Source: Neoconidiobolus thromboides FSU 785
Taxonomy: Eukaryota > Fungi > Entomophthoromycota
Assembly: GCA_025603075.1 (NCBI GenBank)
Contig: MU626307.1
Coordinates: 56,901-120,900 of the forward strand
Length of the DNA stretch: 64,000 nucleotides
Direction: 5' to 3'
The notes below the pieces were generated by a model. The model saw only the letters and a list, made by a program, of their open reading frames with translations. It did no database searches and was not told where the DNA came from. Positions 11,587 through 23,203 of the stretch are shown piece by piece. Numbering within the stretch: position 1 is the stretch's first letter; each line of letters opens with the position of its first letter. The position numbers were made by a program, and so were the translations under genes.

Positions 11587-12313
11587 TTATACTGGAAGTC
11601 TAAACTTTTGTCCATACATAACCCTAAAAAAGATAAATACCTTAACAAAATTCTATAAAATAAACTTACTTTGTAACATATATATAAAAGAAATCAGCAT
11701 AAAGGGCAGTCTGAACAATACCTGCAATAACAGTGTAAGGATGAAAAATATTTTCAGTGTTGTAGCGATAGATCCAATTAATTATATAAAGTCCACGATA
11801 AGCTCCTAAAGCAAAAAGATAATGTGTAGTAATGTTCTCTGCCTCTCCTTTACGAGTTAACATAAATAATTGTGGAAAAATAGCTACCGCTTCTAAATAA
11901 ATAGAAAATGTCCATATAATCTAAAACTATAAGTGATATTAAAATTTTACAGTAATCATTACCTCATAAACCTCAAATTTTTCATGAAACAATAAAGCCA
12001 AGATGGCTGCCCCAACGGCCAAATATTCGGCACGAAATAAGTCGTCTCCTTTATTATAGGTAGGCTTCAACTTATATTGCATAAGATATACGACATAAGC
12101 TGATGATGCTATGAAAAAGAGACGCATAACAACAAGATAAAGACTTCCATAGTACCAGAAAAGGTTCAAATAACGGGTACCAAATACAGCCAGATATAAA
12201 ACTTGAGACTTTAAAGAAATACCTGAACAAGAGTTGGTTTGAGTGATCTTTAACAATAAAATTAGGATTGATGCTAAGTGTAGCATATCCCCAAGTAATC
12301 GAAATATATTCAT
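11587..12313 (-). CDS. ERD2: HDEL/KDEL ER lumen protein retaining receptor
   Basis: [63 protein letters not shown]. Confidence 0.95.
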
Positions 12314-14981: not shown

Positions 14982-16007
14982 ATGGTGAAACCAGAAGAAG
15001 CTCCAGAACACTGCCCAGTAACTTTCAATACATAACTTAGAAGCTATTTAAAAATTTTATTACCAGGGAACAGAATCAAATAATGCTGGAAAAGCAGACG
15101 CTTGTGCAGGTTGTCCAAATCAACAGATATGTGCAACAGCACCTAAAGGCCCGGATCCAGGTAGGCTTAAAAATAAAATAACTTAGATTAGACTAACCCA
15201 AAATTAGATTTATTCCTAATAAAAGAGAGATTAAGCCAAGTTAAACATAAAATCTTAATTTTAAGCGGGAAAGGAGGAGTAGGAAAGAGTACATTTACCA
15301 CCCAATTAGCTTTAGCTTTAAGTCAAGATGAAGATGTTCAAGTAGGATTGATGGATATCGATATATGTGGGCCAAGTATACCAGTCATGCTAGGTGCAGA
15401 AGAAGAAAAAGTACATCAAACTGCAGCTGGATGGACACCAATCTATGTAAAGGATAATTTAAGTTTAATGAGTATTGGATTCCTTTTAGATGATGAAGAC
15501 GATGCAGTGATATGGAGAGGGCCTAAAAAGAACGGTATAATTAAGCAGTTTTTAAAAGAGGTTGAGTGGGATGATTTGGATTTTATGTTAATGGACACGC
15601 CACCAGGAACTTCTGACGAGCATCTCAGTATTGTGTCGTTTTTAAAGGAGAGTGGCGTAACCGGGGCTGTTGTGATTACAACCCCATCAGAAGTGGCTTT
15701 ATTAGATGTTAGAAAAGAGATTGATTTTTGTAATAAGGTAAAGCTACCCATCTTGGGTGTGGTTGAAAATATGGCAGGCTTTGTATGCCCTAACTGTGAA
15801 AATGAGTCTACTATATTCCCCCCTACTACTGGTGGTGCTAAAAAAATGTGTGAGGAGCTGAACCTTGATTTACTTGGGTCCATTCCTCTGGATCCTAAAT
15901 TGGCCCAATGCTGTGATGAAGGAAAAGACTTTTTACAGCTGTTCCCTAATGCTAAAACTAGTTTGGAATTATTATCCATAGTAGATAAATTAAAGGCTAA
16001 AGTATAA
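14982..16007 (+). CDS. NBP35: Cytosolic Fe-S cluster assembly factor
   Basis: N-terminal EHCPG...[10 protein letters not shown] ferredoxin-like motif, [26 protein letters not shown]. Confidence 0.95.
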
Positions 16008-16270
16008 AATAACCAGATTGTATATTCTATTTTAAAGTATTGGGCAGCATTAGGTACTCAGATGACAAATGAGTTAAAATTTTAGTTAAAATATATATAT
16101 GAAATAAATAAAAATTAAGATTAACTATTAATTTATTACTATTAATTTATATTATGAGTACTTGATGTAATTGAATAGTTGCTTTGTCCTAGCCTAACAA
16201 TAAATAATAAATACCACCACAATTATTTTCTATCTTAAATAGCTTAGATTATTAACATAAATTAAACAAT

Positions 16271-18489
16271 CTATTTTTTAGCTGAATGAAGCTCAACACT
16301 CATAAGTGCTTTTTTAGCCTCAATATTTCCAAATTTAGCCGCCTGATTAACTAATTGTAGCCCTTTTTCTATATCCATTTTGACTCCTTGACCTTTAATA
16401 TAACAAGTTCCTAAATGATAGAGCGAAGACTTGTCCCCTAATTGGACTGCTTGATCAAAATAATGGACTGCTTTTTGGTAATATATGTCATTGTTCTCTT
16501 TTGATTGAGCTAATTGGTAATAATGGTTTCCTAAAAAATCTAACGCCTTAGAATGCCCAGAGGCTGCAGAAAGTTCCATATAATTAATGGCTTTCTCTAT
16601 ATCTTTTTTACATATATCCTTATACCCCCAATAATGATACGTACCTAGATAGTAAAAGGCTTGTATATCACCATACATAGCCAACCCTTGGAATATTTTA
16701 TAAGCTTGTGGTTTTTTAGAGTTTTGATGATAATCAATCGCTCGTTCCATATCCCTTTCTATACTTTCTATTTTATAACTTTCTATTTCCGGAGATCTAA
16801 TCGATGAGTTTTTCAAATCTCTTGTTATGTTATTTACTGTTATATCAATTGGCCCATTGCCTACTTTTCGAACAAGAAGCGGCATCTTGTTTTTAGCCTC
16901 CTTTTGGTGCTCTATAATTTTTTTTCTAGGGCTGTTTTCCACTAAATAAAGTTTAAAATATTACGTTTTAACGTATATAATAAAATCTTACATGATGCCT
17001 CGGGATTTAATTTTGTCCAGAATAATTTAGTATTTGTTAACTCAATTATACCGTCAGTGTCTAATCCATAAAAATCATTTTCAATTTGCTTTTCTTTAAA
17101 CATTTTGTTATAAATAGATTCGAATTGAGCAACCAATGTATCTGAACCTGGTCTTGAATTAGGCTCGAAGTTCCAAGCTTCACTAATAAGCTCTGCTAAA
17201 TCATCAGGGAACTGAGATAAATTTTCGTGCTTTGGATTTACGCTGAAAGAAGCTATAGAAGAAGGATTATGTAATTCACCGAATGGAGTTCTTTCAGCAT
17301 AAATTGACCACAACAATAAGCCTATTGAATAAATATCCCCTTTGAAAGACCAAACATATTTTTGTTTAAAACTTTCTGGTGGCATAAAAATAAACTCACT
17401 AAAATCTTTGTTCATACCTAAATTTGTGTGATGTAGGTTATATTCCTTTGAGAACTCAAAGCCAGACAGTTTTAGGTCATAATTATCATCAAATAGTAAA
17501 TGGTTTAAATTTAAATTACGATGAATAATATTTAATTCGTGCAAATAATCAACCACTTCTAGAAGTTGCTTCATCCATTTAAATTTTAGAGACAAAGTCT
17601 TTTCTATATTATTATTCGAAATTATTTGCTTTAAATTACCATTACTACAATAATCCATAATTAAACCAGTTTCATTACTATTGATCCATAACCCGTGAAT
17701 TTTAATAATACTTTCACACTCGCTTAATCGACCGACCATAGCCGCTTCCTTTTTTAACTTGAGTAAAATTTCCTTACTTATCCCTTTGTACCTCCTTTCC
17801 ATCACTGGTTTCCCACGATATCTCTTTAAGATTAATTTATGGCTCCCTTTTTCACTTATAACTTTTTCATCTTCATTTTTACCTTCCTTTTCAATCTCAT
17901 ATTTTTTTAAATCATTTGAGCACCCACCTTTGATCCCATCAATATCTTTAATAATATTTGTTTTGTTAGTTGTTGCTGAGTCTAATATCGTTGATATCTT
18001 TTTCAAGTCATGAATAGTACTATTAAACGTATCCCTTACTCTTCTTAAATTGTCATTGAAAGCATCATTCGATCCATTGTTTTGATCCATCTGTTCAACT
18101 ACTAGGGTGATTTGTTTCAATTGTTGAGTAGTACATTGCATCTCACTTAACCACTGTATAATCACCTTGTTATTTTGTTCTTTATTAATAATTCGAATAA
18201 ATCTTCCACTTTTACTCAAAGCTATTAAACAAGAATGAATACCATCGAGCAAAATCATATATTGCTGAATGGAACTATAGAATAAAATTTGTTCAAACCA
18301 AAAATGGTGCTTTGGATATATCTCAATTAAAGACTGGATATATTGCTTACTTAGCTTAATTTCATGTGCTAAAGCTTCTCGGATACTACTATTATGTTTT
18401 AGTTTGTCTACTGAGCTATCAATATTTGCTAGAAAAATCACGCATTTGTGCATCAAATTGATTGCAGAGTCCTTTTGAGCTGTTATCAT
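16271..18489 (-). CDS. Helical-N-terminus / MLKL-like pseudokinase / Sel1-repeat protein; two track ORFs joined by a 50-nt intron (16942-16991)
   Basis: GTAAGA...TTTAG phase-1 intron fuses SSC-frame exon 1 to LENSPRK in frame; kinase fold with PVMER, HRN, GFE, PPE; three Sel1-like repeats (AFYYLGTYHYWG, ALDFLGNHYY, SLYHLGTCYIKGQGV). Confidence 0.85.
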
Positions 18490-19215
18490 TATAAAAATTG
18501 GATAAATTAAAACTTAGAGATTATTGATGTCTCTTTTTATATAATTTATCTTGTTGTCTTATATAGTAATTGTAATTGTAATTAATTAATTTTATGTTTA
18601 ATTTTAATTTTAATTTATGGCTTTTTGATTTGTTTTTAAATTAAGTAATTATACAGTAAAGTTTGTTAATAACTTCTAAATGACAGTAACTGTATTAGTA
18701 ACAATAACAAAACCCTTATCAAACTATCACCATCTCAACCAGTTATAGCTTTAACAAATATACTATACTTTCTAACTATATATTTTAAAAATTTGTCTTA
18801 AACTTCTAGCTTTTAACAATAAACCAACCATCTGTTTAATTTTAATTATGTGCTAGCTAATGTTAATTTTACTAATCAATAAGCTATAATATTGAGCTAA
18901 TTTCGAGCTTGACACTTAGATTTATATTCCCAAATAAAAAGCTAAGAAATACTCATTTAACTTTAAACAGATATAGCTTTAAAATTGATGTTACTGATTC
19001 AAATTGCCATTTTTAGTAATAAAGAATGATTCACTCATAAAATACATTAGATGAGTAGTTTAAAATAACAATGTAATATCATTAATTATGATGTGCTATT
19101 AGTTATGTAGTCCCTATATTCGAATACTCATCGTATAAATATTAAATCATTTCATAATATTAGGGGAAATTCTCTATGTTTTGAATAAACATGTGAATAT
19201 TTTCAATAAGAGATA

Positions 19216-22423: not shown

Positions 22424-23203
22424 TTAACTTTCATTCTCAAATGTGACAAATTGAAACCCATCTCTAGCTCTACTCCTTCTTTTTTTACCTCTTTCTTTTA
22501 AATTATTAGTGACTGGTAAAATAGGTTGCATCATTTCTTGATATTGGGTATCAAAAATGGACATACAATTTTCTTCCATTTGATTATTTTTTAACATGGA
22601 AGTGAATAATTCCCTTAACCTTTCCCTTGAAGGCAACTGTACATTAGGACACATCAATTTTAACATATTTAAAAAAGCAGGAGATTCTAAACTAGATAAA
22701 CTTAAAGAGTCTTGTAAGATCCAACGAACAATAGCTTCTTCTAATTGAGCTTCAGAATGTTGATTATTGTCCATTGTTTGTACATTATTTAAACTTAAAA
22801 ATGGGTTTTCAGGTCCCTTTTGGCCATTTTTTGGTATTGAAAAGATACCATGTTTTTTATTTAAATGTCGGATCAATGTATCAATTCGTGTACTGGGTTT
22901 ATAGGAACGTGTACAGTTACTGCATTTGATTAAATCTTCATTTTCTTTATCGAAATAATAATACGCATTCGTTGTGTTACCTATGTTTAAGCTATCTTCG
23001 TATAGACGGAATGTATGCAATTGATCCTTAGGTACGTCCATACTTGATTTTATTTGTTCTTGTGACGGGTTACCAAGGTCTTCGTCGTCTTCATCATCAT
23101 CGTCCATCTCTTCTTTGGCTCCAAAATTAAGTTTTATATCGCTTTCTTCATCATCTAAAAATAATTCATCACCCATATTGATCAAATCTTTCATATCTTC
23201 CAT
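22424..23203 (-). CDS. BED zinc-finger protein with hAT-transposase-like N-terminal helical segment, no catalytic domain, intronless
   Basis: KCSNCTRSYKPSTRIDTLIRHLNKKH (C2H2 BED spacing) followed by IVRWILQDSLSLSSLESPAFLNMLKLMCPNVQLPSR; basic C-terminal NLS-like KKRRSR. Confidence 0.75.
   Translation of the reverse strand: MEDMKDLINMGDELFLDDEESDIKLNFGAKEEMDDDDEDDEDLGNPSQEQIKSSMDVPKDQLHTFRLYEDSLNIGNTTNAYYYFDKENEDLIKCSNCTRSYKPSTRIDTLIRHLNKKHGIFSIPKNGQKGPENPFLSLNNVQTMDNNQHSEAQLEEAIVRWILQDSLSLSSLESPAFLNMLKLMCPNVQLPSRERLRELFTSMLKNNQMEENCMSIFDTQYQEMMQPILPVTNNLKERGKKRRSRARDGFQFVTFENES

What the first reader, a model, noticed from the sequence alone, without database searches (positions are those of the whole stretch)
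16271..18489. MLKL-like pseudokinase fused to Sel1 repeats: candidate fungal necroptosis-type executor or sensor
Seen in the sequence: a 50-nt intron (16942-16991) joins the two track ORFs into one ~720-aa protein with three parts, a ~190-aa helical N-terminus, a kinase fold and three Sel1 repeats. All canonical catalytic motifs are altered: no Gly-rich loop, VAIK to VMER, HRD to HRN (17515-17523), DFG to GFE (17455-17463). Established knowledge: mammalian MLKL is a four-helix-bundle plus pseudokinase with GFE in place of DFG, and mouse MLKL has HRN in the catalytic loop. The stretch HRNLNLNHLLFDDNYDLKLSGFEFSK closely parallels mouse HRNISSSSFLVAGGYQVKLAGFELSK. The N-terminus has an SKSGRFIRII segment like those ending MLKL/MCAfunc/HeLo-like bundles. 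Kinase-Sel1 proteins are expanded in some early-diverging fungi, but they are usually thought of as active TKL kinases. Inference: a membrane-disrupting cell-death module whose switch (pseudokinase) and ligand sensor (Sel1) are fused in one chain.
Basis: partly seen in the sequence, partly recalled or inferred. Interest (0 to 1): 0.85.

Follow-up and report, generated by a model that had tools for sequence, protein, structure and literature searches.

The report
Fungal MLKL homologue carrying Sel1 repeats
This expressed, spliced gene of the insect-pathogenic fungus Neoconidiobolus thromboides encodes a relative of MLKL, the protein that punches holes in membranes during animal necroptosis, with an extra tail of Sel1 repeats, which makes it a good place to test whether fungi have an MLKL-type cell-death switch.

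Summary
A minus-strand gene (18489..16271) has one 50-nt GT..AG intron (16942-16991). The intron is removed in RNA contigs of three public runs. The gene encodes the 722-aa NCBI "kinase-like protein" of Neoconidiobolus thromboides FSU 785. HRN, GFE and VMER sit at the stated coordinates.

- An exhaustive search found proteins of the same architecture in Conidiobolus coronatus, Entomophthora muscae, Massospora cicadina and two unidentified transcriptomes. SGFE and an Asp-less catalytic loop are conserved.
- The family profile's two best hits among all PDB sequences are full-length mouse and human MLKL (E 6.5e-45 and 7.6e-44). Each aligns end to end in one stretch: four-helix bundle, brace and pseudokinase.
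- The N-terminus alone gives sub-threshold MLKL_N and MLKL hits. Its AlphaFold model (pLDDT 77.5) superposes on the human MLKL N-terminal domain (Z 9.5, 2.6 A over 120 residues).
- Strain variants are 22 synonymous to 4 non-synonymous.

Not shown: cell-death activity, the trigger, or a phylogeny that includes MLKL. Sel1 is the best-conserved domain, so it more likely binds a conserved partner than a variable ligand.

Fungal MLKL homologues are already mentioned in the literature. I found no description of the Sel1-tailed form. The scan's first readers noted two similar genes elsewhere in this genome.

The parts
16992..18489 (-). Exon 1: codons 1-499 plus the first base of codon 500
   Evidence: ORF and sequence; identical to P0001; covered by RNA contigs
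16942..16991 (-). 50-nt GT..AG intron, phase 1
   Evidence: Skipped exactly by contigs in runs X1, X2 and X4; the junction matches P0001
16271..16941 (-). Exon 2: rest of codon 500 to the stop codon (16271-16273)
18085..18465 (-). Residues 9-135: four-helix bundle (helices 9-27, 34-57, 68-101, 103-135), MLKL_N/HeLo-like
   Evidence: AF2 model on the 7-sequence alignment, pLDDT 77.5. VIA-align: human MLKL NTD 6ux8 Z 9.5, rmsd 2.6 A over 120 residues; mouse 4btf Z 8.7. Profile hits to MLKL. Pfam MLKL_N sub-threshold in two orthologues.
17875..18084 (-). Residues 136-205: long helix (141-194), equivalent in position to the MLKL brace. It ends in the (V/K)EIPxxxxK-type motif (YEIEKEGK in this protein).
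   Evidence: AF2 helix 141-194. Aligned to MLKL residues about 108-209 within one continuous stretch. Family alignment.
17095..17874 (-). Residues 206-465: TKL-type pseudokinase domain
   Evidence: Pfam Pkinase/PK_Tyr_Ser-Thr, E about 1e-30; PDB hits to MLKL, RIPK1, ZAK and JAK
17794..17805 (-). VMER in place of VAIK (beta3 Lys replaced by Arg). Orthologues have VAEK or VSEK, with the Lys kept.
17515..17523 (-). HRN in place of HRD: the catalytic Asp is lost. The catalytic-loop Asn is also absent (HRNLNLNH).
   Evidence: four of the five aligned relatives have HKN(I/L)KTSS, P0064 has a degenerate loop without this motif
17455..17463 (-). GFE in place of DFG. S-G-F-E is found in five of six family members; the sixth has SNFE.
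   Evidence: MLKL has AGFE
16292..16759 (-). Residues about 561-716: Sel1 repeats (3 recognised by Pfam), the best-conserved domain of the family
   Evidence: Pfam Sel1 E 7e-13; 30-39% identity to the four relatives with an intact Sel1 region, against 15-20% for the bundle

Best explanation
The gene encodes a true homologue of MLKL. It has an N-terminal four-helix bundle of the MLKL_N/HeLo type, a brace-like helix and a catalytically dead TKL pseudokinase. A disordered linker and three or four Sel1 repeats follow at the C-terminus. It belongs to a conserved family in the Entomophthoromycotina.

By analogy with animal and plant MLKL, the pseudokinase and brace would hold the bundle in an inactive state. 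A signal would release the bundle, which would then oligomerise and insert into a membrane, causing ion leakage or cell death. That signal could be phosphorylation of the activation loop by an unknown kinase, or gain or loss of a partner bound to the Sel1 repeats.

Shown here: gene structure, expression, purifying selection, loss of catalytic residues, family conservation, and full-length homology to MLKL. Inferred: autoinhibition, the trigger, membrane permeabilisation, and any role in fungal immunity or self/non-self death.
For: - Splicing and expression.
- Selection: 22 synonymous against 4 non-synonymous strain differences, pN/pS about 0.04, including 10:1 in the bundle-brace region.
- Relatives: the same architecture occurs in C. 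coronatus (845 aa), E. muscae, Massospora cicadina and two transcript contigs of unidentified species.
- Motifs: S/F/E of SGFE are invariant in the family. The catalytic Asp and Asn are missing in every member.
- Full-length match: the family profile searched against 177,635 PDB sequences ranks mouse MLKL 4btf first (157 bits, profile 11-455 to residues 9-465 of 469) and human MLKL 6lk5 second (154 bits, residues 4-469 of 471). Each is a single stretch.
- Kinase-only profile: MLKL scores 128-133 bits, level with ZAK (137) and above CTR1 and RIPK1 (128).
- Control: a profile of the nearest active TKL-Sel1 kinases puts CTR1 at 207 bits, and MLKL is not in the top 60, so it scores under 172 bits.
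- N-terminus alone: human MLKL at E 0.08 over residues 4-199; Pfam MLKL_N at E 0.02-0.04 over nearly the whole model in two orthologues; structural match Z 9.5 at 2.6 A; HeLo-like proteins dominate the AFDB-cluster hits; ESM features.
- Shared junction motif: EIPQRQIKSI in P0018 against EIPQEQIKEI in human MLKL, at the brace/pseudokinase boundary.
- Tree: the family is a 100/97-supported clade apart from 35 other TKLs.
Against: - No hit of the N-terminus alone reaches significance. Pfam MLKL_N scores 14-15 bits against a cut-off of 27, and the query itself gives none.
- Helical bundles give middling Z-scores to many unrelated proteins, and designed helical proteins and CAMP factors rank above MLKL. 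Foldseek against PDB and Swiss-Prot did not list MLKL.
- With the family kinase profile, several active fungal or protist TKL-Sel1 kinases score higher (148-159 bits) than vertebrate MLKL (128-133).
- Part of MLKL's high rank could come from shared loss of catalytic residues.
- MLKL could not be included in a tree.
- There are no functional data.
- Sel1 is conserved rather than variable, so the sensor idea is weak.
Confidence: 0.78

Rival explanations
1. Independent assembly. A HeLo-like four-helix bundle was fused, within early-diverging fungi, to a member of the fungal TKL-Sel1 kinase family. That kinase then lost its catalytic residues. On this view GFE, HxN and the MLKL-like layout are convergent with MLKL, not inherited. 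The protein could still work like MLKL.
For: Kinase plus C-terminal Sel1 is a common layout in early-diverging fungi, and active TKL-Sel1 kinases are the best non-family matches of the kinase domain: 91 bits against 74 for mouse MLKL with the single sequence, and 148-159 against 128-133 with the profile. Each motif change needs few substitutions. The paralogues P0030 and P0045 in the same clade have GFG and GLN instead of GFE, so the motif is labile.
Against: The alignment to MLKL runs without a break through bundle, brace and pseudokinase, with similar lengths and a shared EIPxxQIK junction motif. The family is not nested among TKL-Sel1 kinases in the tree. MLKL ranks far higher for this family than for the control TKL-Sel1 profile.
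Confidence: 0.15
2. A non-lethal signalling scaffold. The pseudokinase and Sel1 repeats assemble or anchor a conserved protein complex, and the N-terminal helices serve only for oligomerisation or localisation, with no membrane damage.
For: Sel1 is the most conserved domain and Sel1 repeats are typical adaptor modules. The gene is steadily expressed in ordinary RNA samples. No death assay exists. The query has lost even the beta3 Lys that its orthologues keep.
Against: The N-terminal domain resembles specifically the membrane-acting MLKL_N/HeLo/RPW8 group by sequence, features and structure. Constitutive expression is also true of MLKL, which is held inactive until triggered (established knowledge of MLKL).
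Confidence: 0.25
3. An atypical but active protein kinase that uses non-canonical residues.
For: The overall kinase fold is intact, with Pfam E about 1e-30. Orthologues keep the beta3 Lys as VAEK.
Against: The catalytic Asp (HRD to H[RK]N), the metal-binding Asp (DFG to GFE) and the catalytic-loop Asn are all absent across the family. There is no Gly-rich loop, and the query has Arg at beta3.
Confidence: 0.04

Closest known systems
Mammalian MLKL (mouse 4BTF, human 6LK5)
   Same: The order and size of the modules match: four-helix bundle, brace, then pseudokinase. GFE replaces DFG and, as in mouse, HRN replaces HRD. The Ser-rich catalytic loop of mouse MLKL (HRNISSSS) recurs in four relatives (HKNIKTSS). 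An EIPxxQIK motif sits before the N-lobe. MLKL is the best PDB match to the family profile, aligned end to end.
   Different: This protein has about 255 extra C-terminal residues, a linker plus Sel1 repeats. The query has Arg instead of the beta3 Lys. No RIPK3-type partner or phosphosite is known. Identity is low, and the N-terminus is only marginally similar in sequence.
Plant MLKLs (Mahdi et al. 2020, as cited in PMC12881547 and PMC11476962)
   Same: They are non-animal MLKL homologues with a HeLo-type bundle, a pseudokinase and a lineage-specific C-terminal extension. ESM feature hits include plant MLKL_N/MCAfunc/RPW8 clusters.
   Different: The plant extension is not made of Sel1 repeats (my own knowledge of the cited work). 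No direct sequence comparison was run here.
Fungal HeLo/HELL proteins (HET-S, HELLP) and HeLo-like N-termini of fungal NLRs
   Same: The predicted fold of residues 1-170 most resembles 'Fungal N-terminal domain'/PigL_N (PF17111, formerly Helo_like_N) proteins in the AFDB clusters and the ESM Atlas. A review notes that some HELL domains are joined to kinase or pseudokinase domains (PMC12881547).
   Different: Those proteins are triggered by amyloid templating or by an NLR in the same chain. No prion-forming or NACHT/NB-ARC part was seen here. The taxa differ: Dikarya against Entomophthoromycotina.
Glomeromycotina kinase-Sel1 proteins, filed under the TCDB 'MLKL family 1.A.105' (PMC8778642)
   Same: They have a TKL-type kinase domain followed by Sel1 repeats, and they are the best non-family matches of the kinase domain.
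   Different: The close matches checked here keep HRD and DFG, so they should be active. They lack the roughly 200-residue N-terminal bundle, and they fall outside the family clade.
Basidiobolus meristosporus 'MLKL' ORX91397.1 (PMC11476962)
   Same: It is an MLKL homologue already reported from a fungus traditionally placed in the same subphylum (my own knowledge), so MLKL-like genes in this part of the fungal tree are not unheard of.
   Different: I do not know whether it has Sel1 repeats or belongs to this family.

Membership tests
MLKL family | N-terminal four-helix bundle (Pfam MLKL_N PF22215) recognised at Pfam's gathering score | tested here: not met
   The query N-terminus gives no Pfam hit. 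Orthologues P0164 and P0018 hit MLKL_N at E 0.036 and 0.022 (14-15 bits against a cut-off of 27), covering model positions 2-116 and 3-125 of 142.
MLKL family | N-terminal domain folds as a 4HB like the MLKL N-terminal domain | tested here: met
   The AF2 model (pLDDT 77.5, pTM 0.71) has four helices plus a long fifth. VIA-align gives human MLKL NTD 6ux8 at Z 9.5, rmsd 2.6 A, 120 of 152 residues, and mouse 4btf at Z 8.7. Caveat: Z below about 13 is not specific for helical bundles.
MLKL family | Collinear full-length homology: bundle, brace, pseudokinase | tested here: met
   The family profile ranks 4btf (E 6.5e-45, residues 9-465 of 469) and 6lk5 (E 7.6e-44, residues 4-469 of 471) first and second of 177,635 PDB sequences, each in one stretch. 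The N-terminal profile alone hits 6lk5 residues 4-199 at E 0.08.
MLKL family | Pseudokinase: catalytic residues lost, GFE in place of DFG | tested here: met
   The query has HRN, GFE, VMER and no Gly-rich loop. Across the family, S/F/E of SGFE are invariant and the catalytic Asp and Asn are absent.
MLKL family | Kinase domain groups with MLKL in a phylogeny | not tested
   No tool delivered MLKL sequences as files, so MLKL could not be put in a tree. Surrogates: MLKL ranks level with ZAK at the top for the family kinase profile but is outside the top 60 for a control TKL-Sel1 profile. The family is a separate 100/97 clade among its 35 nearest TKLs.
MLKL family | The N-terminal domain permeabilises membranes or kills cells when released; activation is by phosphorylation of the pseudokinase | not testable with these tools
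   This needs expression, liposome and phosphorylation experiments.
Active TKL-Sel1 kinases of early-diverging fungi | Intact HRD, DFG and VAIK catalytic motifs | tested here: not met
   The nearest TKL-Sel1 kinases have HRDIK and DFG.
Active TKL-Sel1 kinases of early-diverging fungi | C-terminal Sel1 repeats after a TKL-type kinase fold | tested here: met
   Pfam Sel1 E 7e-13.
Active TKL-Sel1 kinases of early-diverging fungi | Kinase domain nested within that clade | tested here: not met
   In the ML tree of 43 kinase domains, the family plus P0030/P0045 form a clade (100/97) outside all sampled TKL-Sel1 kinases. The root is at the midpoint only.
Fungal HeLo/HELL cell-death proteins | HeLo-like N-terminal helical domain | tested here: inconclusive
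   Foldseek against the AFDB clusters is dominated by PigL_N/'Fungal N-terminal domain' proteins, but at E about 1e-2 and TM 0.4-0.57. The atlas row for PF17111 has TM 0.52. There is no Pfam sequence hit.
Fungal HeLo/HELL cell-death proteins | C-terminal amyloid (prion-forming or RHIM-like) trigger motif, or an adjacent NLR gene | tested here: inconclusive
   The neighbours are a NUBP-like NTPase, a KDEL receptor and a BED-finger gene, with no NLR. No specific amyloid-motif search was run.

The most novel reading that the evidence does not exclude
The 4HB-brace-pseudokinase module of MLKL is an ancient eukaryotic cell-death switch that insect-pathogenic fungi have kept. In these fungi it is wired to a different trigger. 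A conserved Sel1-repeat domain in the same chain binds, or is released from, an endogenous partner and so sets off the bundle. That would be an 'all-in-one' MLKL that needs no RIPK3-type kinase.
Probability: 0.3. Interest if true: 0.8.

Novelty: new variant of a known kind. Interest (0 to 1): 0.58.

Why it matters
MLKL-driven necroptosis is usually described as an animal pathway, with relatives in plants. In fungi, the known necroptosis-like executors are HeLo/HELL proteins triggered by amyloids or NLRs.

This gene belongs to a conserved and expressed family that keeps the complete MLKL module and adds a conserved repeat domain. The family spans Conidiobolus, Neoconidiobolus, Entomophthora and Massospora. 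It offers a direct way to ask three questions:
- Is the pseudokinase 'switch' mechanism older than animals?
- What triggers it where no RIPK3 is known?
- Can the Sel1 repeats act as the regulator?

It also corrects the bland 'kinase-like protein' annotation. It separates true MLKL-like genes from the active kinase-Sel1 proteins that have been loosely filed under 'MLKL family' in early-diverging fungi (PMC8778642).

Tried and rejected
- Single-sequence AlphaFold of the whole protein was useless (pLDDT 38.8).
- Three word-index homologue searches found no orthologues. Only the exhaustive phmmer search did.
- Pfam gave nothing for the query N-terminus, even at E 10.
- Foldseek of the N-terminal model against PDB and Swiss-Prot returned only generic helical proteins such as IncA, designed repeats and GPCRs, and no MLKL. 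The shape search of the ESM Atlas was mostly unrelated bacterial helical proteins, apart from one PF17111 row.
- I looked for a functional gene cluster around the gene and found only housekeeping neighbours.
- I looked for copies in the window and found none.
- I wanted a tree that includes MLKL, RIPK and plant MLKL. No tool provides those sequences as references and long sequences may not be typed, so I used profile rankings against PDB and a tree of the nearest kinases instead.
- I considered 'Sel1 as a fast-evolving ligand sensor' and rate it unlikely, because Sel1 is the most conserved domain.
- I considered contamination or recent transfer and rejected it. The base composition matches the window, the gene has a short intron, and related fungi carry relatives.
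Full report
**Gene structure and expression.** The finding lies on the minus strand. ORFs 18489..16942 and 16942..16271 are joined by a 50-nt intron at 16942-16991. The intron starts GT and ends AG on the minus strand and is in phase 1. The spliced product has 722 aa. It is identical to the NCBI protein 'kinase-like protein [Neoconidiobolus thromboides FSU 785]' (P0001), with the junction NPEAS-L-ENSPRKK. Public RNA-derived contigs in three runs skip exactly these 50 bases. One 2268-nt contig covers 16171-18488 with no mismatch.

The other runs carry 26 single-base differences, from a different strain or close relative. Of these, 22 are synonymous and 4 are not, giving pN/pS of about 0.04. In the N-terminal helical part (bundle and brace, codons 1-205) the count is 10 to 1. 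The protein is therefore under strong purifying selection.

**Domains and motifs.**
- Pfam finds a kinase fold at residues 243-453 (E 1.5e-30) and Sel1 repeats in the C-terminal part (E 7e-13, 2-3 stretches). It finds nothing for residues 1-205.
- The catalytic-loop Asn is also missing (HRNLNLNH), and there is no Gly-rich loop.
- With the single sequence, the best solved relatives are JAK, mouse MLKL (E 5.6e-20), RIPK1 and ZAK, all at about the same level.

**A conserved family.** The word-index searches found no relatives. The exhaustive phmmer search of 1.8 billion representatives did. These proteins align from the N-terminus through the kinase domain, and most also through the Sel1 repeats:
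- Conidiobolus coronatus KXN69999.1 (845 aa)
- Entomophthora muscae KAJ9055772.1
- Massospora cicadina KAI0241771.1 (partial; its C-terminal region does not align with the Sel1 block)
- two full-length transcript contigs of unidentified species

In the alignment, S, F and E of SGFE are invariant. The C. coronatus, P0018, E. muscae and Massospora proteins have HKN(I/L)KTSS and VAEK. The query has HRN and VMER. P0064 has VSEK, SNFE and a degenerate loop in place of HKN. The loss of the catalytic Asp, the metal-binding Asp and the catalytic-loop Asn is thus a family trait kept across distantly related genera, not an accident of this gene.

Identity of the query to these relatives differs by domain (for Sel1 the Massospora partial model is set aside):

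| Domain | Identity to relatives |
|---|---|
| Sel1 | 30-39% |
| Pseudokinase | 27-30% |
| Four-helix bundle | 15-20% |
| Brace and linker | 5-18% |

**Relation to MLKL.** I searched a profile of the full-length family alignment against all 177,635 distinct PDB sequences.
- Full-length mouse MLKL (4btf) came first: E 6.5e-45, profile 11-455 to residues 9-465 of 469.
- Full-length human MLKL (6lk5) came second: E 7.6e-44, residues 4-469 of 471.
- Each is one unbroken stretch, so bundle, brace and pseudokinase align collinearly.

The N-terminal profile alone (7 sequences) hits human MLKL residues 4-199 at E 0.08 and five MLKL N-terminal constructs at E about 0.5. These were the only natural non-coiled-coil hits. 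That alignment shows a shared motif at the brace/pseudokinase junction: EIPQRQIKSI in P0018 against EIPQEQIKEI in human MLKL. Two orthologue N-termini hit Pfam MLKL_N over nearly the whole model, but below threshold (E 0.02-0.04). Language-model features of the query and of an orthologue both point to clusters carrying MLKL_N, MCAfunc, DUF7792 and RPW8.

With the 7-sequence alignment, AlphaFold gives a confident model (pLDDT 77.5, pTM 0.71). It has four helices (9-27, 34-57, 68-101, 103-135) and a long fifth helix (141-194). An exhaustive structural scan of 48,161 PDB representatives aligns it to:
- the human MLKL N-terminal domain, Z 9.5, 2.6 A over 120 of 152 residues
- mouse MLKL, Z 8.7
- the RPW8-like CC domain of NRG1.1, Z 8.2

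Designed helical proteins and CAMP factors rank higher, and such Z values are not specific for helical bundles. Foldseek against the AFDB clusters returns the C. coronatus orthologue first. After it, the list is dominated by fungal 'N-terminal domain'/PigL_N (PF17111, formerly Helo_like_N) proteins. Foldseek against PDB and Swiss-Prot was uninformative.

**Is the kinase domain specifically MLKL-like?** I could not put MLKL in a tree, because no tool supplies its sequence as a file. I used three surrogates instead.
- The family kinase-only profile ranks MLKL (128-133 bits) level with ZAK (137) and above CTR1 and RIPK1 (128).
- A control profile of the nearest active TKL-Sel1 kinases ranks CTR1 at 207, ZAK at 193 and RIPK1 at 180 bits. 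MLKL is outside the top 60, so it scores under 172 bits. MLKL is therefore relatively much closer to this family than to ordinary TKLs.
- In absolute terms, several active TKL-Sel1 kinases score higher against the family profile (148-159 bits) than vertebrate MLKL does. Shared loss of catalytic residues must also add to MLKL's score.

A maximum-likelihood tree of 43 kinase domains puts the family in one clade (100/97) together with a second pseudokinase-Sel1 pair. That pair is P0030 from N. thromboides and P0045. The clade stands apart from all 35 other TKLs, including the Glomeromycotina ones. Within the clade, the query groups with P0064 and, weakly, with P0030/P0045, rather than with the C. 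coronatus/Entomophthora/Massospora group. The query is therefore probably a divergent paralogue lineage.

**Interpretation.** I rate common descent of the whole bundle-brace-pseudokinase module with MLKL at about 0.8. The main rival is independent fusion of a HeLo-like bundle to a TKL-Sel1 kinase followed by convergent decay, at about 0.15. In either case the protein is built like MLKL.

The proposed mechanism is inferred from MLKL biology, not shown here. It has three steps: autoinhibition by the pseudokinase and brace, release on a signal, and membrane insertion of the bundle. Because Sel1 is the most conserved part, I expect it to bind a conserved endogenous partner, as regulator, anchor or trigger, rather than to act as a diversifying ligand sensor. 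The query's beta3 Arg, where its orthologues have Lys, suggests it may not bind nucleotide even if they do. A non-lethal scaffold role remains possible, at about 0.25 for the function question.

**What is already known.**
- A study of metazoan MLKL states that MLKL homologues exist in fungi and uses a Basidiobolus meristosporus 'MLKL' (PMC11476962).
- A survey of early-diverging fungi filed Glomeromycotina kinase-Sel1 proteins under the TCDB MLKL family (PMC8778642). The close matches I checked are active kinases without the bundle.
- I found no paper that combines MLKL with the Entomophthorales, and none describing an MLKL-Sel1 fusion.
- First readers of this scan noted two similar genes elsewhere in this genome. 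I did not check them.

**Verdict.** This is a real, expressed and conserved gene. It is a new Sel1-tailed variant of the MLKL family in insect-pathogenic early-diverging fungi. Its function is untested.

Noticed in passing
P0030 (N. thromboides KAI9297844.1, 561 aa) and P0045 (Logan contig, 739 aa); not in this window: This is a second pseudokinase-Sel1 subfamily, with HAN..GFG and HCN..GLN in place of HRD..DFG. It falls in the same clade as the MLKL-like family (100/97). Its N-terminus is not recognisable as MLKL_N.
   Followed up: partly
P0002, P0165-P0168 (Rutidosis leptorrhynchoides, Tanacetum coccineum): These Asteraceae tandem kinase-like proteins were the top word-index hits of the family profile. 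Both kinase-like domains of P0002 have GFE in place of DFG (IIHRN..LSGFE and VIHGD..IVGFE). They may be plant GFE-type pseudokinases.
   Followed up: no
window 16171-18492: Runs X2-X4 (organism B) carry 26 single-base differences from the window in this gene, 22 of them synonymous. Run X1 is identical to the window. RNA contigs stop within a few bases of the ATG (18488-18492), so the 5' UTR is very short or was not assembled.
   Followed up: partly
window 15348-16007 (+), 11939-12313 (-), 22424-23203 (-): The neighbours are a NUBP/NBP35-like P-loop NTPase (convergent with this gene), a KDEL-receptor exon and a BED zinc-finger ORF. There is no NLR, kinase or other cell-death gene nearby.
   Followed up: partly
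P0135 (ENA contig, 1280 aa, organism unknown): This protein has an HKN-type pseudokinase domain, then an HKD/DFG (apparently active) kinase domain and many ankyrin repeats. It scores 152 bits against the family kinase profile but falls outside the family clade.
   Followed up: no
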